This document shows, piece after piece, positions 13,071 to 53,110 of a DNA stretch of 64,000 bases (position 1 is its first letter; every line of letters begins with the position of its first letter). The position numbers were made by a program, and so were the translations under genes. The stretch lies in sequence record NC_028899.1, one strand, 5' to 3'. Below the pieces are notes generated by a model. It did no database searches. It was not told the origin of the DNA and saw nothing but the letters and a program-made list of their open reading frames with translations.

Positions 13071-14381
13071 GTGGATAACAGATTAGATCTAACGATTGAC
13101 CAGATCTATCAACTCGGCAAAAATGGTTCTGAGGACCTTGCAGCCGGGCTGGAGCGCATTTACAACGCGACTCCGCTCGGACCGCTGCCGAGTAACATGG
13201 TCAACACGATTTACGGTATCAACCACCGACAGACTCAGCTGGCTTTGCCTTTCAACCGCGACAATTATGGTTTGACATTTTTTACGCGGCCAAGGATGAA
13301 CCTGACCACTAACAACATGCGTTTTGTTAGGCAAATGTATCCGTTGTTGAACACGGAGCCAAGGTCTATTCAGCGGATTATTCGCTGCTTGCTGGATCCC
13401 TCACTGGCATATCCAGACACGCAGTATACCAACATCCAACCTGTCAAGTCGCCCTACGTGGACGACCTGAATATGTTTATTCCTCTGCTGTCAAATCTTT
13501 GCCTGACAGTTTCCGGCTGGCCTGATTTCGTCGTCGATACTCATACGACGCCCGAGGGTCATTACCGGGAATCGCACAGCATGATCGACAGCAGTGTTGA
13601 AGTGAAAAACACATACGAATTGTCGGTGTCCTTTCGGAACATACCGAATAATCCGGTCACATTATTGTTTTATTTCTGGATCTTCTACGCATCGAAGGTC
13701 TTCGAAGGTGAAATGATTCCGTATGGCTCCTCGCTGTACGAAAATGAGATCGATTACAACACCCGGATCTACCGACTGGTACTTGATCCGACCAAACGAT
13801 ACGTGCAACATATCCTGTCGACGGGTGCTTCGTTCCCGCTGAACGCTCCTGTTGGTGCGCTTGGCAACTTCGATCACGAGCAGCCCTTCAATGAATCAGG
13901 GGATAACGTCAACATCCGTTTCCAATGTATCGGGATGGATTACAACGATCCGATTCAGATCCAGGAATTTAACACTGCCGTCTCGATCATGAATCCTGGC
14001 ATGGATGACGCATTCCGTGACCAGTATTACATCAAGATTCCTTACCAGATCCTTTCGTTCTTCAACATGCGTGGTTATCCGCGCATCGAGAAGAGCACGA
14101 TGGAACTGGAATGGTACGTGTCCTATGCGATGTTCCAGTCGTATGCCAGCCAGCTGGCTGACTTTGCGAATATCCAGGGTATGCGCAACCAGACGTTCTT
14201 GCAATATATTTCCGCCTCTAGTGTCAATGATTATAAGAAAGCGTTGAGTGACATGGATAGCTCCGTGCCTAACGCTACCTATAACGGCGGGCTGGTCAAA
14301 CGAGCCGTCAATGGCGAATTTAGCCAGGATGAACTCGACCAGATTTCTCAAGCATACTTCGCTTCCAATGGAGCCAATTAA
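13071..14381 (+). CDS. Virion structural protein, phiKZ gp88-like (tail/baseplate candidate)
   Basis: 436 aa, GTG start; synteny; GLTFFTRPRMNL segment. Confidence 0.65.
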   Translation: MDNRLDLTIDQIYQLGKNGSEDLAAGLERIYNATPLGPLPSNMVNTIYGINHRQTQLALPFNRDNYGLTFFTRPRMNLTTNNMRFVRQMYPLLNTEPRSIQRIIRCLLDPSLAYPDTQYTNIQPVKSPYVDDLNMFIPLLSNLCLTVSGWPDFVVDTHTTPEGHYRESHSMIDSSVEVKNTYELSVSFRNIPNNPVTLLFYFWIFYASKVFEGEMIPYGSSLYENEIDYNTRIYRLVLDPTKRYVQHILSTGASFPLNAPVGALGNFDHEQPFNESGDNVNIRFQCIGMDYNDPIQIQEFNTAVSIMNPGMDDAFRDQYYIKIPYQILSFFNMRGYPRIEKSTMELEWYVSYAMFQSYASQLADFANIQGMRNQTFLQYISASSVNDYKKALSDMDSSVPNATYNGGLVKRAVNGEFSQDELDQISQAYFASNGAN

Positions 14382-33848: not shown

Positions 33849-34253
33849 TCATTCCGGAACATAAGAAAGTACAACGTAAGCGATACCAGGTTCGAGTCCG
33901 ATCTTGTCGCCAAGAATCGGAATCAAGCTGATACCGTCCAATGACGACATATAAAGCGCCGTCAGCCCAGCTTTGTCGTTTTCGAATTCACATTCACACG
34001 TGAATGCGCCATCGTCTTCGACAATTTTGCCAGCCTTAATGCACTGGCTAAAATCGGTTTTGGAGGGATTCTTCCCCTGGATGTACTGCTGGAGTGCGTA
34101 GGCCAAACGAGCCGGTCTAGCGCCCTCGTTGAAGGCCGCAAAGTGCTTTCTCCACTCATCCAGATCAGTCTCGTACTCAGGCGGTAAGAAAATGTCCACA
34201 ACCTGATTGGTACGAGACCGGATAGTCTTTTGAACTAACCGGTCCAGGCTCAT
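33849..34253 (-). CDS. Hypothetical protein (134 aa)
   Basis: ORF coupled to the upstream gene (GGAG RBS in its last codons). Confidence 0.65.
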   Translation of the reverse strand: MSLDRLVQKTIRSRTNQVVDIFLPPEYETDLDEWRKHFAAFNEGARPARLAYALQQYIQGKNPSKTDFSQCIKAGKIVEDDGAFTCECEFENDKAGLTALYMSSLDGISLIPILGDKIGLEPGIAYVVLSYVPE

Positions 34254-34254
34254 A

Positions 34255-34530
34255 TTACTCCTCGTTCAAAAGTAAAAGTACTTTGTTGAAAACATCTTGC
34301 CAGGTATCGAACGGGCCTTCAATGAGATTGAGTTCCAGTTCGGTTTCCAGTTCAGACAGAATGTCCATGTGATCCAGCGCATCCAGATCCCCGCTCTGGA
34401 AAGACAACGCCAGGAATTCACGGAACTCCGCACTGTTCTCGACCGCAGACTTGCGAACCGTTTTCGAATCGTACGACGCTACAACATTGACAAGCACTCG
34501 TCGTGCTTTTTGTGCTTTGGCCTCAGCCAT
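34255..34530 (-). CDS. Acyl-carrier-protein-like protein lacking the phosphopantetheine serine (DAL instead of DSL)
   Basis: SFQSGDLDALDHMDILSELETELELNL..FDTWQDV aligns by eye to ACP [35 protein letters not shown]; 91 aa, acidic C-terminal half. Confidence 0.65.
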   Translation of the reverse strand: MAEAKAQKARRVLVNVVASYDSKTVRKSAVENSAEFREFLALSFQSGDLDALDHMDILSELETELELNLIEGPFDTWQDVFNKVLLLLNEE

Positions 34531-34584
34531 TTTAAAACCCCGCCTTGTTATTACTGTTACTGGTTTCGGTCGAAAACCAAATAA

Positions 34585-34779
34585 TCAGTCGCGCTTTATG
34601 TTGTATAAATCTTTCAATTCAGGATGGCTGACGCGAAGTTGAATCATCCAGGAACTCGGCACGTCATTGAATTCGAAAAACATCTGAAAAGCCTGCCCTT
34701 TCTCGTCCACAACCTGACAGAGAATGTGTTTGTCCTGAGGCAGTTTCTTCATTTGTTCGATAATGTCTGCGGGAGTCAT
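34585..34779 (-). CDS. Small hypothetical protein (64 aa)
   Basis: ORF with GAGG RBS. Confidence 0.6.
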   Translation of the reverse strand: MTPADIIEQMKKLPQDKHILCQVVDEKGQAFQMFFEFNDVPSSWMIQLRVSHPELKDLYNIKRD

Positions 34780-34804
34780 AAGACCTCAAAAAAAATAAGT
34801 AGAC

Positions 34805-35295
34805 AGCAAAAAGGGCGGTACAGAGTGGCCGAAGCCACCCCATACCGTGCCTAAGATGAAACAGAACGTGCATCCCAAGGTCGTCGAACCTACCGTCCAG
34901 GAATTACAGACGACGACTATGGGCTGCAAGCTACTCAGCGAGTGTCTCCCGACATATCGCATAACTTACAACTGGTCCCGAAAAGACCCCTTACAATCGA
35001 TGCGGGCGTAACACACACGAAGGCCCAAGATACGCTCCGGCGCCGCGAACGCGCGCGGCGCCGATAAGCTGCCAGGCATCACCAAGCTCTTAAAGGAGAT
35101 CTCATATCGGCGGCACTAAAAGGCGGCCATGAGATGTGATTGCGATGCGGGATGGAAACCGATTTCGAGACCGATTCCTATCGCGCGTACGACATGTGTG
35201 TTTCGCAGGCTTTTCACCTGAGTGAGGGGCTAAGTGGCAACCAAGCGGCCAATCCCAACACATCTGACTTGCACAGATCTTCAGACGCCATCTTG
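34805..35295 (-). ncRNA. Candidate large structured ncRNA (~490 nt) ending in a UUCG terminator hairpin
   Basis: No credible ORF. Many stems (11-bp 35037-35064; ATCTCAT/ATGAGAT; CGCAT/ATGCG; GTCGTCG/CGACGAC), long-range pairs, a 9-bp pseudoknot candidate, and GU wobbles favouring minus. Confidence 0.6.
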
Positions 35296-35307
35296 TTAAA
35301 GAACGAA

Positions 35308-35344
35308 TCGGCTGAACGATCCCTCACGAGATTGGTCCAGCCGA
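35308..35344 (-). terminator. Hairpin after the Ala-rich gene (terminator or first domain of the ncRNA)
   Basis: TCGGCTGGAC...ATCTC-GTGA-GGGAT...GTTCAGCCGA followed by TTCGTTCTTT. Confidence 0.6.
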
Positions 35345-35354
35345 CAGATCACGC

Positions 35355-36383
35355 TTACGGTTGCAGCGCGTCGGTTTGGTCCGCTGCGGCGGCGTCGACT
35401 GCGGGCGCGGCAGCTTGTTCAGCCGTTGCGTCCGCTGCCGGTGCCTGTGCTTGAGCGGCATCGGCTTCCACCGGTGCTGCCGTTTGCGCCGCATCCGCAG
35501 CTTGCTCCGCCGGAGCGCCAGCGAGTGCCGCAGCCGTTGCCGGGTCTGCGTTCACTTCCGGCGTTTGCGCCAGAGCTTCCGGCGAGTGGTCGACTTCTTG
35601 CGAAGCGTCACCAGCCGGTGCAGCTGCTTGATCCGCAGCGGGGGCTTCAGCTTGAGCAGCGTCCGCTGCCGGGGCTTCTGCCTGTGCTGCTTGCTCACCG
35701 ACGGCGGGGTCGACTTGCGGGGCAGCTTCTTGAGCCACGCCTGCATCAGCCGCGCCGGCCGGTTGAGCTTGTGCAGCAGCGTCGTTCGTCACGTCAGCAG
35801 CTTGGGCCGGTGCTGCGGCTTGTGCATCTGCTGCGGGAGCGTCGACTTGTGCAGCATCTGCGGCCGGAGCCGTTTCTGCTGCTGCATCGCCTGCGACTTG
35901 CTCGGGTGCCTGTTCAGCTTGCGCTGCACCTGCGTCCACGCCAGCCGCGGGATCTTGTTGGGCGTCCGCTGCCGGAGCAGCTTGTTCCGCCGTACCGGCA
36001 TCCGCCGGTTGTTCTGCTTGAGCGGCGTCGGCTGCGGGAGCCGCGTCCGTTGCGCCAGCTTCTTGCGCCGGGGCGTCGCCCGCCGGTTGTGCTGCTGCGC
36101 CTGCGTCTTGTGCCTGACCTGCTGCGACCTGGCTGTCCAGTGCAGCTGCTGCTGCGCCGGCTGCTGCCGCTGCGGCCACGCCGTTGTCGCCGAGGCCGAG
36201 TGCTTCGTTCGTCTTGTCGCCGAGACCTTCGACGTTGTCCGTCACCACGACCGGATGCTCTTCCTTCTTCTTGTGGAAGAGGTTGACGATGCGGTCGACC
36301 ACGTGTTCGGGCAGTGCAGCGAGGGCTTCGACGGCCAGCAGTTCGGCTTTCAGTTCGTCGATGACTTTGTGGATGATACTCAC
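35355..36383 (-). CDS. Acidic Ala/Gln/Pro/Asp-rich intrinsically disordered protein with an N-terminal helix
   Basis: APAADAAQAE-type repeats; AAGGAAAG RBS; highly biased codons. Confidence 0.75.
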   Translation of the reverse strand: MSIIHKVIDELKAELLAVEALAALPEHVVDRIVNLFHKKKEEHPVVVTDNVEGLGDKTNEALGLGDNGVAAAAAAGAAAAALDSQVAAGQAQDAGAAAQPAGDAPAQEAGATDAAPAADAAQAEQPADAGTAEQAAPAADAQQDPAAGVDAGAAQAEQAPEQVAGDAAAETAPAADAAQVDAPAADAQAAAPAQAADVTNDAAAQAQPAGAADAGVAQEAAPQVDPAVGEQAAQAEAPAADAAQAEAPAADQAAAPAGDASQEVDHSPEALAQTPEVNADPATAAALAGAPAEQAADAAQTAAPVEADAAQAQAPAADATAEQAAAPAVDAAAADQTDALQP

Positions 36384-36434
36384 GATCTTTCCTTTATGGA
36401 AGGTTAAGTTGTACAGCGTTTTACCAGCAAAACG

Positions 36435-37039: not shown

Positions 37040-37492
37040 GAAGGCGCAGCCTAAGCTTAGTCTACAAGGCCGTAAAGGATCTTACGTGCATATCCAGGAC
37101 GCCAATCATCTCGTCCATAAATTTGCATCAGTTCCTCAAACGACTCGTAGTACTCCGGATCCCATTGATCTTCAAGGCCGTAGCACGAGCAGTGAGACGC
37201 GTACACTTCGAAGAATTGCTTCTTCTCGTGATCGTATCCAAACACCACCGAAGATCCTTCATAATCCTGGCACTCATACCCTGCGTACAGGATCTGGTAC
37301 TTCGGATCATCTACGATTCGAAATTGCTCGAAAACATCTTCGCGCGATTTAAATTCGTCATGGAAAACGGGTTCTTTCGACAACAGCGTAGCTTCGTTCA
37401 TGATAATTCCAGTATTGAGTTAAGGAAAGCATTTCCTATACGCACTCTTTACTGAACTTCTCACTACCTAACCACGCCTAAGCTGCGCCTTC
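37040..37492 (-). repeat. 16-bp imperfect inverted repeat (37040-37055 / 37477-37492) bracketing ORF 37057..37401
   Basis: Minus RNA GAAGGCGCAGCUUAGG pairs fully with CUUAGGCUGCGCCUUC (14 Watson-Crick + 2 GU). Confidence 0.8.
37057..37401 (-). CDS. Hypothetical phage protein (114 aa)
   Basis: YAGYECQDYEGS...FEVYASHCSCYGLEDQW motif, recalled as seen in diverse phages. Confidence 0.7.
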   Translation of the reverse strand: MNEATLLSKEPVFHDEFKSREDVFEQFRIVDDPKYQILYAGYECQDYEGSSVVFGYDHEKKQFFEVYASHCSCYGLEDQWDPEYYESFEELMQIYGRDDWRPGYARKILYGLVD

Positions 37493-37500
37493 GAAGAAAA

Positions 37501-37590
37501 AGCCTGAGATCTATATCGCCGGGGGAGACGCTTTGTTAGAGCCGCATACCGTAGGAGGTTGGAGCATGCGCTCGAACTCGATCTCAGACC
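37501..37590 (-). ncRNA. Candidate 90-nt sRNA with anti-Shine-Dalgarno and C-rich loops
   Basis: 11-bp closing stem; long hairpin with loop UCCAACCUCCUACG; second hairpin with loop UCCCCC; U-run after. GU pairs work only on minus. Confidence 0.6.
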
Positions 37591-37630
37591 AAAAAAAATA
37601 GAAGGTGAACTGTGAAAGCTTCACCCCCTT
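37591..37630 (-). terminator. Intrinsic terminator between the two small RNA elements
   Basis: GGTGAAGCT-TTCAC-AGTTCACC followed by TTCTATTTTTTTT. Confidence 0.7.
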
Positions 37631-37640
37631 ATTAAAGAGG

Positions 37641-37750
37641 TGCCCAGAACGCATACCCGTCGCCGCGGGCGCATCCTGATTGGGTCTGTGTCATCGCCTG
37701 CGTGCGTTCTCGCCGCGTGGCTATGAAATCAAGACGATCGTTCTGGGCAA
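37641..37750 (-). ncRNA. Candidate 110-nt structured RNA
   Basis: Perfect 11-bp closing stem TGCCCAGAACG/CGTTCTGGGCA; inner GTCTTGATT/AATCAGGAT, TCAT/ATGA, GCG-AGAA-CGC and GCCCG/CGGGT stems. Confidence 0.55.
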
Positions 37751-37775
37751 ATGATAAAGACTTTCTGTTATTTTT

Positions 37776-51538: not shown

Positions 51539-53110
51539 TTAAAAAGTGTACAGCGAAATGAACTGCGCATTCCGCAGCTGCATGTAGATGGCATAGTCAG
51601 CCAACCGATTCCGAATGTCGTAACCCACTCGGTGAGTTTTGTTTGCAGCGCTGCCACGCAGCTCCGCGATTTGCTCCTCAGCCATGTTCAGAAACCACGT
51701 ATGGTCAGACAACTGCTGAGCCAAATCCATGATTTCATTGACAGCGTCGTTGTTGGGCTTCACCGCCTTTTTCGTCGGATGACGACGGTAGTACGGATAA
51801 AGCTCATTGAGTTTATCGATTTTGTCCTTCGTGATGTGAGCACGCGACTCGGAACTATACGAGCCATAGCCTTCTGCATTCATGCTTCGTGCAGTCGGAA
51901 TGCCCGCCAGATCCTTGAAGTCCGTATTCCACAGAACGAATTGAGCAATGCCAGCCAGGCGCAAGATGCTGGACTTGTTGATGTCCCACATCGAGCGAGC
52001 ACTGACGATCGGACTGACGACCCACTGGATGATTCGGATCTGACATTCTTCCAGTGTGTGGCTGCTCATTGCATCAGCAGCTTCCATCGCACGATCAAGC
52101 TCGGCGATTTCTTCTTCCGACAATTCGTTCTTCAGCAACAGCCGCGCTGCGATCTCCCGATAATACTCGGTCCACTTCTCGATTGCGGTGAACTCACCCG
52201 GCGGAACCAAAGGCTTGTTCTTGTACTTCTCCGCACGCGACGAAGAGTCTTCGCTCGAATCGTCCTCGTTCGGATTGATCTTTTCAAGAATCGCGTTCTG
52301 ATGGCTTTCGTTTTGCGAGAGCCGATTGCGAAGCGTCTTGTGGATGATCTGCACGAGATGCGTGTCCGACGGTTGACGCGTGAAGCTTGCGATCACCAGG
52401 AAGCGCACGAGGATGTTCGCTACCAGGTTCGTCTGGAACACATCGGAACCAATGCCGTCGATGGATGCTCGAATGTTGATGTCGTCTTGTTTGACGTTCT
52501 TCGCCACATAGTGGTTCAGACGCTGCATTGCCGGCGACTCAGCAATCGAACTCTTCGAGATCGTGAAGTACGCATTCAGATCTCGGAATGTCGGACCAGA
52601 TTCCTTTTTCGTGATTTCTGCGAACTCACCCCAGATCGGAGCGATCGAGCGCAGCTTAATCACCATGTACACGAGTTCCCAATAGTCCGTGATCAAATAC
52701 GTCTGCTCACGGCTGCCGGGTTTCTCGTGCGAAAACTTGTACTCTGCATCCAGATCTTCAGGAATCCAAATGCCTGCATGATAACGAGTCCAACGCTCGA
52801 AATCTTCCGTGTCGTGGAGATCGATGATCTCGTTGACGATCGGACGCAACTGGAGAATCAACGGGTTGACGTTGAATGTCTCGTTGAAGACGATCTTTGC
52901 CTGGCGATACAGATCGAAGATTTTGTCCTGAAGTTCGATGTCGATCCGCGACCAGTACTTATTGATTTGTTGAAACGGTTCGTATGTTCCTTTCTTGAAT
53001 GCTTGTCCATAAACCGATCCGCTGAACTCCAGGGTTTCCCCACGGTGTTCGATCAGGATCATACCGTTACCAGCGACGCCTGCGTGTTGGAATTTCGCTT
53101 GCATCGACAC
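51539..53110 (-). CDS. Non-virion RNAP fifth subunit (promoter-specificity, phiKZ gp68-like)
   Basis: 523 aa; KPGSREQTYLITDY and PIWGEF segments; synteny. Confidence 0.75.
   Translation of the reverse strand: MSMQAKFQHAGVAGNGMILIEHRGETLEFSGSVYGQAFKKGTYEPFQQINKYWSRIDIELQDKIFDLYRQAKIVFNETFNVNPLILQLRPIVNEIIDLHDTEDFERWTRYHAGIWIPEDLDAEYKFSHEKPGSREQTYLITDYWELVYMVIKLRSIAPIWGEFAEITKKESGPTFRDLNAYFTISKSSIAESPAMQRLNHYVAKNVKQDDINIRASIDGIGSDVFQTNLVANILVRFLVIASFTRQPSDTHLVQIIHKTLRNRLSQNESHQNAILEKINPNEDDSSEDSSSRAEKYKNKPLVPPGEFTAIEKWTEYYREIAARLLLKNELSEEEIAELDRAMEAADAMSSHTLEECQIRIIQWVVSPIVSARSMWDINKSSILRLAGIAQFVLWNTDFKDLAGIPTARSMNAEGYGSYSSESRAHITKDKIDKLNELYPYYRRHPTKKAVKPNNDAVNEIMDLAQQLSDHTWFLNMAEEQIAELRGSAANKTHRVGYDIRNRLADYAIYMQLRNAQFISLYTF

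What the first reader, a model, noticed from the sequence alone, without database searches (positions are those of the whole stretch)
34805..35295. ~490-nt highly structured, possibly pseudoknotted ncRNA of no recognised class
Seen: an ORF-free gap with AAGAUG/CAUCUU closing pair (35289-35294 / 34853-34858) and CAUCCC/GGGAUG long-range pair (35149-35154 / 34871-34876). It also has an 11-bp GC hairpin (35037-35064), AUCUCAU/AUGAGAU, a long CGCAU...AUGCG arm with a UUCG tip, and GUCGUCG/CGACGAC. AACACACAU (35194-35202) can pair 9 bp with GUGUGUGUU (35010-35018) inside another hairpin loop, a pseudoknot candidate. There is a T-loop-like GGUUCGA (34884-34890) and a 3' UUCG terminator. I do not see tmRNA, RNase P, SRP or group I/II consensus motifs. 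Inference: a large ncRNA comparable in size and complexity to the ROOL/GOLLD phage-associated RNAs, or a new ribozyme or scaffold.
Basis: partly seen in the sequence, partly recalled or inferred. Interest (0 to 1): 0.8.

Follow-up and report, generated by a model that had tools for sequence, protein, structure and literature searches.

The report
New large structured RNA in jumbo phages
The gap holds a real, roughly 490-base folded non-coding RNA gene that is kept in every sequenced relative of this Ralstonia/Burkholderia jumbo phage, matches no known RNA family, and has no known function.

Summary
The window is the last 64 kb of Ralstonia jumbo phage RSF1 (Chiangmaivirus, phiKZ-related). The ORF-free gap 34780-35354 carries a ~488-nt RNA on the minus strand (about 35294 to 34807). 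It is conserved end to end at 73-81% identity in eight other Chiangmaivirus genomes and one soil metagenome contig.

- **Not coding:** there is no conserved ORF, indels are not multiples of three, and substitutions show no 3-base periodicity.
- **Structured:** my hand model has 88 pairs. 97.6% of cells pair, against 35-49% when partners are slid; 15 pairs change on both sides; 0 of 500 shuffles reach the covariation score.
- **Strand:** 125 G·U cells place the RNA on the minus strand.
- **Architecture:** three 5' hairpins; a 10-bp long-range helix closing a four-way junction; three 3' hairpins; a strong intrinsic terminator.
the "pseudoknot" is that nested long-range helix. The CAUCCC/GGGAUG pair and the T-loop are RSF1-only and are rejected.
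- **No known class:** Rfam 15 gives nothing even at E<=10, and ARAGORN finds nothing. My two covariance models find no copy in the loci fetched from the nearest outgroup phages.
- **Not tied to the next gene:** ORF204 is deleted in FLC6 while the RNA stays intact.

This is most likely a stand-alone, trans-acting structural RNA of a new family. Its function is untested.

The parts
34807..35294 (-). Whole proposed ncRNA, about 488 nt, read 35294 to 34807. The 5' end is inferred from where conservation with the metagenome copy begins; the 3' end is the terminator U-tract.
   Evidence: Conserved end to end in 9 phage genomes and 1 metagenome contig. Has no conserved ORF. Covaries. The comparative model is within 2.6 kcal/mol of the MFE.
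35297..35345 (-). Hairpin plus U-rich tail immediately after the ORF204.1 stop. Probably the upstream gene's terminator. Its tail, CGUUCUUUAACAA, is an invariant AT-rich block that could also be the RNA's promoter.
   Evidence: Covarying stem at columns 20-30/48-58. Flagged as terminator-like. The block is invariant in all nine phage genomes aligned but absent from the metagenome copy, where an ORF runs into the RNA.
35260..35288 (-). S1: 7-bp stem GCGUCUG/CAGAUGU with a 15-nt loop that carries the invariant palindrome AGAUCU (35275-35280).
   Evidence: G.U to U.G swap. CUGAAGAUCUGU is invariant in 9 of 9 sequences.
35223..35259 (-). S2: variable two-tier hairpin.
   Evidence: Each lineage folds to the same topology with a different sequence.
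35206..35220 (-). S3: 5-bp stem with a GAAAR loop, followed by the invariant GCGAAA.
   Evidence: A-U to G-C covariation.
35193..35202 (-). S4 5' strand, AACACACAUG.
   Evidence: Pairs with 35010-35019. 100% of cells pair; C-G to U-A and U.G to C-G changes occur.
35147..35186 (-). S5: long hairpin with internal loops. The tip GUCUCGAWA is largely conserved.
   Evidence: A hairpin is predicted in every lineage with changed stems.
35078..35140 (-). S6 sub-domain. AUCAC/GUGAU closes S6 (AUCUCAU/AUGAGAU) and mini-hairpin S7. The S6 tip hairpin carries two GCCGCC copies.
   Evidence: S6 and S7 covary. S7 is replaced by CCCGAAC/GUUCGGG in the metagenome copy and is deleted in SURPRISE13.
35023..35077 (-). 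S8: GC-rich arm (core 35038-35063) with the invariant tip CGCGCGCGUUCGCG.
   Evidence: Three pairs change on both sides. The tip is invariant in 9 of 9. The metagenome copy adds about 43 nt that fold as an extra hairpin next to it.
35010..35019 (-). S4 3' strand, CGUGUGUGUU.
34966..34996 (-). S9: UUGUAA/UUGUAA plus GGUCUU/GGGACC hairpin. It is preceded by the conserved GCCCGCAUCGAU, which contains the palindrome AUCGAU.
   Evidence: 99% of cells pair, with only one-sided U-A to U.G changes. Covered by CM R1.
34938..34960 (-). S10: GCGA-UA-UGUC-GGGA-GACA-C-UCGC hairpin. RSL2 and the FLC phages have a different hairpin at this place.
   Evidence: UGUC/GACA to CGUC/GACG covariation. The same module occurs in the Ripduovirus non-coding region.
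34865..34932 (-). S11: long three-tier arm, AGCUUGCA/UGCACGUU, CCCA/UGGG and GUCGUC/GACGAC, with a variable tip.
   Evidence: Two pairs change on both sides; 98.8% of cells pair.
34848..34864 (-). Linker CUGUUUCAUCUUAGGCA.
   Evidence: P0 has 7 bp in RSF1. It has one mismatch in the FLC phages, RsoM3USA and the metagenome copy, and one A-U to U-A swap. RNAfold forms it under the comparative constraints.
34807..34847 (-). S12: intrinsic terminator. A 14-bp stem with a UUCG loop, then CCCUUUUUG.
   Evidence: Four pairs change on both sides.
34796..34802 (-). CTACTTA motif between the RNA terminator and the ORF204 ribosome-binding site. It may be the next gene's own promoter or start-region element.
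   Evidence: All 4 exact copies in the 64-kb window lie on the minus strand, each just upstream of a gene start.

Best explanation
This is a stand-alone gene for a ~488-nt highly structured non-coding RNA, transcribed from the minus strand like its neighbours and ended by its own strong intrinsic terminator. It founds a new RNA family, so far confined to Chiangmaivirus jumbo phages of Ralstonia and Burkholderia plus one soil metagenome relative.

The fold has three parts. The 5' domain has three hairpins. The central domain is a four-way junction closed by a 10-bp long-range helix. The 3' domain has three hairpins.

Shown here: it is non-coding, it is conserved, it covaries on one strand, it has a terminator, it is absent from known families, and it does not depend on the downstream gene.

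Inferred: it acts in trans as a folded structural RNA. That could be a scaffold or decoy for phage or host proteins, or a self-associating particle. The invariant loops would be the contact surfaces (AGAUCU in S1, the twin GCCGCC hairpin, the CGCGCGCGUUCGCG tip, GCCCGCAUCGAU). On this reading it does not work by antisense pairing or as a leader for the next gene.
For: - **Identity and conservation.** The window is RSF1. The gap is covered 95-100% at 76-81% identity in all other Chiangmaivirus genomes and is unannotated there. A soil contig has it at 73%. A neighbouring 374-nt gap is only patchily conserved, 28-95% covered.
- **Non-coding.** ORFs differ between genomes. Gap lengths include 1, 2, 4, 5, 17, 22 and 47. 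Variable columns by position mod 3 are 81, 76 and 70.
- **Structure.** Of 88 pairs, 97.6% of cells pair against 35-49% for slid partners. 15 pairs change on both sides, and 0 of 500 shuffles reach the score. Variable hairpins S2, S5, S7 and S10 keep their place and topology with different sequences.
- **Strand.** 97.6% of cells pair on the minus strand against 82.3% on the plus strand; 125 cells are G.U.
- **Transcription unit.** A 14-bp terminator with a U-tract is present and covaries.
- **Independence.** ORF204 is reduced to MKRD* in FLC6, which keeps the RNA intact. A CTACTTA motif recurs upstream of other genes and sits after the terminator.
- **No known family.**
- **No repeats or iterons.**
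- **No antisense targets in the window.**
Against: - There are no expression data. The 5' end and the promoter are not established, and no phiKZ-type late TATG motif lies upstream (PMC7598289).
- Only about six distinct lineages are available, so many pairs are invariant and the shuffle test overstates significance for related sequences.
- The single-sequence z-score is modest: -2.1 for the sense strand and -3.3 for the antisense strand.
- The RNA sits directly upstream of an operon on the same strand, so a leader role is not excluded.
- The trans-acting scaffold function is pure inference. No partner is known, and all neighbouring proteins are uncharacterised.
Confidence: 0.6

Rival explanations
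1. It is a cis-acting leader or attenuator. The folded RNA is the 5' untranslated region of the ORF204-to-ORF201 operon, and its terminator is opened or closed by a bound factor or ligand to control read-through.
For: It lies on the same strand as the downstream genes. The terminator ends only about 28 nt before the ORF204 start. This promoter, structure, terminator, RBS layout is the classic one for attenuators.
Against: ORF204 is deleted in FLC6 with the RNA unchanged. I saw no conserved alternative pairing for the terminator's 5' strand, though I did not run a systematic search. At 440 nt with 11 helices, it is far larger than known leaders. A recurring CTACTTA element lies between the terminator and the RBS, which suggests the operon has its own start signal. 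No riboswitch or T-box model matches.
Confidence: 0.18
2. It is a catalytic RNA: a new self-cleaving or self-processing ribozyme, or a degenerate intron-like element.
For: The RNA has a large multi-helix junction architecture with GNRA-type loops (GGGA in S10, GAAAR in S3) and strictly invariant joining regions.
Against: No group I, group II, RNase P or small-ribozyme model matches even at E<=10. The flanks are separate genes, each with its own stop or start. A terminator-like hairpin follows the upstream gene and the RNA has its own terminator, so there are no exons to join. No covariation-supported pseudoknot was found.
Confidence: 0.06
3. It is a base-pairing regulatory RNA or sponge that targets phage or host mRNAs or sRNAs through its conserved single-stranded loops.
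For: There are long invariant unpaired stretches, such as CUGAAGAUCUGU and GCCCGCAUCGAU. The 3' linker is antisense to an AAGAUG start-like sequence.
Against: No complementary site with 1 mismatch or fewer was found for six of the seven conserved loops searched in the 64-kb window. The S1 loop had one such site, and the looser hits are few. Only 29% of the phage genome and none of the host genome were searched. The size and junction architecture are atypical for seed-pairing sRNAs.
Confidence: 0.08
4. It has no RNA function. It would be a DNA-level element (origin, packaging or protein-binding site), or merely a structured 3' tail of ORF204.1.
For: It follows ORF204.1 directly, and no promoter has been identified.
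Against: G.U-tolerant compensatory changes on one strand only are a signature of RNA, not of duplex DNA. There are no iterons or tandem repeats. The cumulative GC skew shows no turn at the locus. In the metagenome copy, and in SURPRISE13 by gene length only, a different gene lies upstream of the same RNA.
Confidence: 0.05

Closest known systems
ROOL and GOLLD (large ornate phage- or prophage-associated RNAs; Rfam families; cryo-EM nanocages, bioRxiv 10.1101/2024.12.08.627333)
   Same: Both are phage-borne, several hundred nucleotides long, built of many helices supported by covariation, and of unknown function. This RNA has invariant palindromic loop sequences that could in principle make kissing contacts.
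   Different: There is no sequence or structure match to their covariance models. The host range differs: lytic jumbo phages of Betaproteobacteria. No tRNA genes lie nearby. At 488 nt it is shorter than GOLLD. Oligomerisation is untested.
Small RNAs reported in phiKZ-like phages (201phi2-1 sRNA005 and the phiKZ gp182 5'UTR sRNA, PMC11512511; predicted 75-nt phiKZ sRNA, PMC8244752)
   Same: They are non-coding transcripts of phiKZ-related jumbo phages, found between a start site and an early terminator.
   Different: Those are under 250 nt, mostly derived from 5'UTRs and tied to a tail gene. This RNA is about twice that length, has a four-way junction, and is independent of its downstream gene.
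ORF-free structured region of Ripduovirus RP12/RP31 and of FLC1-1B/FLC4-3B
   Same: It occurs in the phages named in the literature as the closest relatives of RSL2 and RSF1 (RP12/RP31, PMC5468394) and in FLC1-1B/FLC4-3B. It is 470-540 nt, ends in a terminator and is highly structured (z -4.4). It shares a hairpin module, stem-(N)A-YGUC-GGGA-GACR-C-stem, including the identical 14-mer AUGUCGGGAGACAC, and a GUCGUAC just after a long-range helix.
   Different: It was not detected by either covariance model or by nhmmer. It lies at a different syntenic position, downstream of the ORF195/196 homologues. It carries an invariant CCUCC-containing loop that RSF1 lacks. Homology is unproven.

Membership tests
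ROOL / GOLLD / OLE / raiA / HEARO (large bacterial and phage ncRNAs in Rfam) | Match to the family covariance model at or near its gathering score | tested here: not met
   cmscan of the whole window at gathering thresholds gave 0 matches. cmscan of 34500-35500 at E<=10 gave only two noise hits outside the RNA.
ROOL / GOLLD | Phage or prophage location, commonly next to tRNA genes | tested here: inconclusive
   The phage location is met. There is no tRNA anywhere in the 64-kb window.
ROOL / GOLLD | Protein-free homo-oligomeric assembly | not testable with these tools
   The only lead is invariant unpaired palindromes (AGAUCU, GCGCGC, AUCGAU). About 7 palindromic hexamers are expected by chance in 488 nt (my estimate, 1/64 per hexamer).
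tmRNA | tRNA-like acceptor/T-arm plus tag reading frame | tested here: not met
   ARAGORN found none. The GGUUCGA "T-loop" is RSF1-only.
RNase P RNA, SRP RNA, 6S RNA | Match to the Rfam model and its conserved core motifs | tested here: not met
Group I / group II intron | Match to the intron core model, and flanking exons that join into one reading frame | tested here: not met
   No model match. The upstream gene ends with a stop and a terminator-like hairpin. The downstream gene has its own RBS and start, and is dispensable.
Riboswitch or transcription-attenuating leader | Constant association with the regulated downstream gene, and a terminator that competes with an alternative pairing | tested here: inconclusive
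   The immediately downstream ORF204 is deleted in FLC6, but the operon continues with ORF203. I saw no conserved antiterminator pairing, and no systematic search was made.
Intrinsic (Rho-independent) terminator (3' end only) | GC-rich hairpin followed by a U-tract | tested here: met
   A 14-bp stem with a UUCG loop, then CCCUUUUUG. Four pairs change on both sides.
Seed-pairing sRNA | Conserved unpaired seed with complementary targets | tested here: inconclusive
   No target with 1 mismatch or fewer was found for six of the seven loops searched in the 64-kb window; the S1 loop had one such site. The rest of the phage genome and the host were not searched.

The most novel reading that the evidence does not exclude
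The RNA is a new class of self-assembling "ornate" RNA. Its invariant, unpaired palindromes would form intermolecular kissing contacts: AGAUCU in the 15-nt S1 loop, GCGCGC at the S8 tip, and AUCGAU in the S4/S9 joiner. These contacts would build a dimer or higher oligomer that serves as a protein-free particle or scaffold during jumbo-phage infection. That would be functionally parallel to ROOL and GOLLD but evolutionarily independent. The Ripduovirus element could be a second, distantly related member.
Probability: 0.12. Interest if true: 0.85.

Novelty: new variant of a known kind. Interest (0 to 1): 0.62.

Why it matters
Structured RNAs of more than about 400 nt with no known function are rare in bacteria and phages. 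Historically, those whose function was solved turned out to be ribozymes, ribonucleoprotein cores or, recently, RNA-only cages.

This one sits in phiKZ-related jumbo phages, which carry their own multisubunit RNA polymerases. Almost nothing is known about non-coding RNA in that lineage. The sRNAs reported from its model phages are under 250 nt, and the review I read (PMC13282480) says only that phiKZ expresses non-coding RNAs.

The RNA is compact enough for in-vitro transcription, chemical probing, mass photometry and cryo-EM. It could also be removed from a phage genome to read out a phenotype. It gives a concrete, testable entry point to RNA-based functions in jumbo-phage infection. These phages are also being developed as biocontrol agents against bacterial wilt and rice seedling rot, so knowing which of their conserved elements are essential has practical value.

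Tried and rejected
- **Rfam 15.** Gathering thresholds on the whole window, and E<=10 on 1 kb around the RNA, gave nothing relevant. ARAGORN found nothing.
- **Collection scans with two invariant motifs.**
  - IMG/VR returned only RSF1 and RSL2.
  - In GTDB genomes, one motif gave 0 hits and the other gave a single 24-nt hit inside an ORF of a Verrucomicrobiota MAG. That hit has no further similarity, and about 0.3 such hits are expected by chance (my estimate for 21 specified bases), so I rejected it.
- **Neighbour proteins.** tblastn with ORF202 and ORF203 against phages found Chiangmaivirus only. The metagenome scan with ORF202 gave one contig, which does carry the RNA.
- **blastn with the divergent metagenome copy.** No new phages.
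- **Outgroup phages.** nhmmer against the RP31 locus, and two covariance models (R1 for the 3' domain, R2 for the 5' domain) against RP31, Xoo-sp14, FLC4-3B and FLC1-1B loci, gave no hits. There is no second copy in the window either.
- **Small-ORF hypothesis.** Rejected. The 25-codon ATG ORF at 35291 loses its ATG in RsoM3USA.
- **Sigma-70 promoter scan.** Nothing on the minus strand upstream of the RNA.
- **Recurring motifs as promoters.** TTT[CT]AAAAT-like and CTACTTA are enriched upstream of genes, but I could not show they are promoters.
- **Antisense target search.** No convincing target in the window. One 1-mismatch site for the S1 loop at 52750 was not examined.
- **Literature.** No description of this RNA or locus.
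- **Full-length z-scores.** A z-score run over all homologues timed out.
- **RNAalifold.** With ribosum scoring it gave spurious long-range pairs, so I did not use it.

Full report
**Where the window comes from.** A blastn search of 34780-35340 matches Ralstonia phage RSF1 (AP014927.1, positions 193668-194228) at 100%. The window is the last 64 kb of that 222,888-bp record. RSF1 belongs to the genus Chiangmaivirus and is a phiKZ-related jumbo phage. The window encodes several multisubunit RNA polymerase beta/beta'-like subunits.

The finding lies in a 575-nt gap (34780-35354). The gap sits between two minus-strand genes, ORF204.1 (35355-36416) and ORF204 (34585-34779). Nothing is annotated there in RSF1, or at the homologous place in any relative.

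**Checking the observation.** Rfam 15 gives no hit at gathering thresholds anywhere in the window. At E<=10 around the gap it gives nothing relevant. ARAGORN finds no tRNA or tmRNA. The single-sequence fold is only moderately better than shuffles, with z -2.1 on the minus strand and -3.3 on the plus strand. The case therefore rests on comparative data.

**Homologues.**
- The whole gap is conserved, 95-100% covered at 76-81% identity, in RsoM3USA, RSL2, FLC6, FLC8, FLC4-4C, FLC4-5C, FLC4-11C and SURPRISE13.
- A metagenome scan with the neighbouring ORF202 protein returned one soil contig, Ga0206354_10093819. It carries the RNA at 73% identity.
- Two motif scans of IMG/VR found only RSF1 and RSL2.
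- Two motif scans of GTDB genomes found nothing except one 24-nt chance match inside an ORF.
- The flanking small proteins are confined to the genus. The next relatives share only about 33-35% identity in the RNA polymerase beta' subunit.
- As a comparator, a nearby 374-nt gap (37402-37775) is conserved only in patches, 28-95% covered.

**It is not coding.** ORFs of 25 codons or more differ in position and frame between genomes. Gap lengths include 1, 2, 4, 5, 17, 22 and 47. Variable columns are spread evenly over the three codon phases, 81, 76 and 70. The 25-codon ATG ORF at the 5' end loses its ATG in RsoM3USA.

**Structure.** I combined RNAalifold with segment-wise folding of each lineage. 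This gave twelve helices:
- S1, whose 15-nt loop is invariant.
- S2, a variable two-tier hairpin.
- S3, with a GAAAR loop.
- S4, a 10-bp long-range helix (35193-35202 with 35010-35019) that encloses the next three arms.
- S5, a long hairpin.
- S6/S7, a sub-domain closed by AUCAC/GUGAU.
- S8, a GC-rich arm with an invariant tip.
- S9, S10 and S11, three 3' hairpins.
- S12, the intrinsic terminator.

On the well-aligned helices (88 pairs, 787 cells), 97.6% of cells form standard pairs. When the partners are slid by 1-3 columns, 35-49% do. Fifteen pairs change on both sides, and 0 of 500 shuffles reach the covariation score. With only about six distinct lineages the shuffle test is generous, but the slid-partner control and the spread of compensatory changes over nine of ten helices are convincing.

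The variable hairpins give a second kind of evidence. S2, S5 and S10 keep their position and topology while their sequences are replaced. S7 changes from CUC/GAG to UCC/GGA to CCCGAAC/GUUCGGG. The metagenome copy inserts about 43 nt that fold as an extra hairpin beside S8.

The comparative model, imposed on RSF1, costs only 2.6 kcal/mol relative to the unconstrained minimum.

**Strand.** There are 125 G.U cells, spread over 25 of the 88 pairs. Read on the plus strand these become A.C mismatches, and pairing drops to 82.3%. The RNA is therefore made from the minus strand, the same sense as the flanking genes.

**Boundaries.**
- *3' end.* A 14-bp, UUCG-capped hairpin followed by CCCUUUUUG, with four pairs that change on both sides.
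- *5' end.* Conservation with the metagenome copy begins at (A/U)AGAUGG, about 35294. Upstream of that, the metagenome contig has a different sequence: a 103-codon ORF whose stop lies inside S1.
- *Upstream in the phages.* A covarying hairpin plus U-rich tail follows the ORF204.1 stop. Its tail, CGUUCUUUAACAA, is invariant in all nine phage genomes aligned.
- *Promoter.* None can be named. There is no sigma-70-like site and no phiKZ-type T(-3)ATG(+1) late motif (PMC7598289). An AT-rich motif resembling TTT[CT]AAAAT recurs upstream of many genes in the window, and the RNA has a similar TTCTTTAACAAG. This is only a lead.

- *Confirmed.* The GC hairpin, AUCUCAU/AUGAGAU, GUCGUC/GACGAC, the AACACACAU/GUGUGUGUU pairing and the terminator.
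- *Re-read.* That last pairing (S4) is nested, not a pseudoknot.
- *Rejected.* CAUCCC/GGGAUG, because CAUCCC is RSF1-only and both strands belong to local covarying helices. Also the GGUUCGA "T-loop", which is RSF1-only.
- *Unresolved.*
  - CGCAU/AUGCG is impossible in RSL2 and the FLC phages and competes with S10.
  - The AAGAUG/CAUCUU closing helix has one mismatch in three lineages and one compensatory swap in the metagenome copy.

**Is it a leader for the next gene?** The terminator ends about 28 nt before the ORF204 start, so a cis role must be considered. Two observations count against it.
- In FLC6, ORF204 has been deleted down to a 4-codon remnant (MKRD*) while the RNA, its terminator and the following sequence are intact. 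The annotations suggest the same for FLC8 and FLC4-11C: the gap between the ORF203 homologue and the RNA is the same length, and no ORF204 is annotated.
- The heptamer CTACTTA lies between the terminator and the ribosome-binding site. All four copies in the 64-kb window are on the minus strand, just upstream of a gene start. This suggests the operon has its own start-region signal.

I rate the leader model at about 0.18.

**Other rivals.**
- *DNA-level element.* Disfavoured by the strand-specific G.U pattern, the absence of repeats and the lack of a turn in the GC skew.
- *Intron.* Excluded by the independent flanking genes and the lack of any model match.
- *Antisense regulator.* Not supported within the window, but the rest of the phage genome and the host were not searched.

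**Distribution beyond the genus.** I built two covariance models, R1 for S9-S11 and R2 for S1-S3. They recover the RSF1 and metagenome copies at E of 1e-26 to 1e-41. They find nothing in 25 kb of RP31, 19 kb of Xoo-sp14 or the FLC4-3B and FLC1-1B loci, and no second copy in the window. Whole outgroup genomes were not scanned.

**A side discovery.** RP12/RP31, FLC4-3B and FLC1-1B have their own 470-540-nt ORF-free, terminator-ended, strongly structured region (z -4.4).
- It shares with RSF1 a hairpin module, stem-(N)A-YGUC-GGGA-GACR-C-stem. This includes the identical 14-mer AUGUCGGGAGACAC, and the inner stem shows the same U-A to C-G variation in both groups.
- It also shares a GUCGUAC just after a long-range helix.
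- It lies at a different syntenic place, downstream of the homologues of RSF1 ORF195/196.
- It is not detected by either model.

Whether the two are distant homologues or share a module is open.

**Comparison with what is known.** In size, helix count, phage location and lack of known function, the closest known kinds are ROOL and GOLLD. Cryo-EM has shown those to be protein-free homo-oligomeric cages held together partly by kissing loops (bioRxiv 10.1101/2024.12.08.627333).

This RNA is not a member of either family, because the model tests were not met. It does have three invariant or near-invariant unpaired palindromes: AGAUCU, GCGCGC and AUCGAU. These make self-association a testable idea, but about seven palindromic hexamers are expected by chance at this length (my estimate).

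The sRNAs reported for phiKZ and 201phi2-1 are under 250 nt and are mostly derived from 5'UTRs (PMC11512511, PMC8244752). None of the papers found by my four literature searches, or read from them, describes this locus.

**Verdict.** This is a real, conserved, ~488-nt structured non-coding RNA gene of a new family, restricted as far as can be seen to one genus of jumbo phages plus a soil relative.
- Confidence that it is a genuine structured RNA: about 0.85.
- Confidence in the full statement, including a trans-acting structural role: about 0.6.

It is a new family within the known broad kind of large phage-borne structured RNAs. The function is unknown and needs the experiments listed under next steps.

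Noticed in passing
L013 7501-8042 (RP31, minus strand); L017 1489-1962 (FLC4-3B); L018 1686-2154 (FLC1-1B): Ripduovirus-type phages have their own 470-540-nt ORF-free, terminator-ended, strongly structured region (z -4.4). It contains an invariant ~40-nt block, ACGUUAAGAUGUCCUCCACCUGGUUUUACAUUCGU, which includes an anti-Shine-Dalgarno-like CCUCC. It shares a GGGA-hairpin module and GUCGUAC with the RSF1 RNA. It lies downstream of the homologues of RSF1 ORF195/196, a different syntenic site.
   Followed up: partly
window 37402-37775 (minus strand): A second ORF-free gap, 2 kb upstream, folds well (z -3.5) and has a long hairpin with a U-run at about 37475-37590. Only positions 171-274 of it are conserved in all relatives, and the rest is lineage-specific. 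It may hold a shorter ncRNA or regulatory hairpins.
   Followed up: partly
window 8909, 34796, 38572, 39813 (all minus strand): The heptamer CTACTTA occurs four times in 64 kb, always on the minus strand and always just upstream of a gene start. A second AT-rich motif, TTT[CT]AAAAT(G), is enriched in intergenic DNA (23 of 56 loose matches fall in the 11% that is non-coding) and often sits just upstream of start codons. Both are candidate promoter or translation-start signals of this phage.
   Followed up: partly
L004 1427-1500 (FLC6) against window 34585-34779: ORF204 (64 aa) is deleted in FLC6, leaving the remnant ATGAAGCGAGACTGA. FLC8 and FLC4-11C have the same spacing and no annotated ORF204, so the same deletion is likely there but was not read. 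A conserved hairpin, GGUUUUCGACCGAAACC, follows ORF204 or its remnant.
   Followed up: partly
window 35355-36416 (minus strand): ORF204.1, directly upstream of the RNA, has a roughly 75-aa N-terminal domain followed by a long Ala/Glu/Asp/Pro/Gln-rich low-complexity acidic region. The gene at this position ranges from 252 to 450 aa among the phage genomes by annotation. It has no Pfam or PHROG match.
   Followed up: no
L012 1138-1449: In the soil metagenome contig, an extra 103-codon ORF lies between the ORF204.1 homologue and the RNA. Its stop codon falls inside the 5' strand of S1, so the upstream context of the RNA is not fixed.
   Followed up: no
window 33849-34253, 34255-34530 and 13071-14381: Some RSF1 gene starts in the GenBank record look too short. 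ORF202 is annotated as 33849-34106, but a 134-aa ORF is 89-92% identical in all relatives. ORF203 is annotated as 34255-34497, against a conserved 91-aa ORF. The 627-nt "gap" before ORF184 is spanned by a longer ORF starting at 13071.
   Followed up: partly
L015 6009-6032: A 24-nt exact match to the S3/S4 motif lies inside a 378-codon ORF of a Verrucomicrobiota MAG contig. There is no further similarity, so this is a chance hit.
   Followed up: yes
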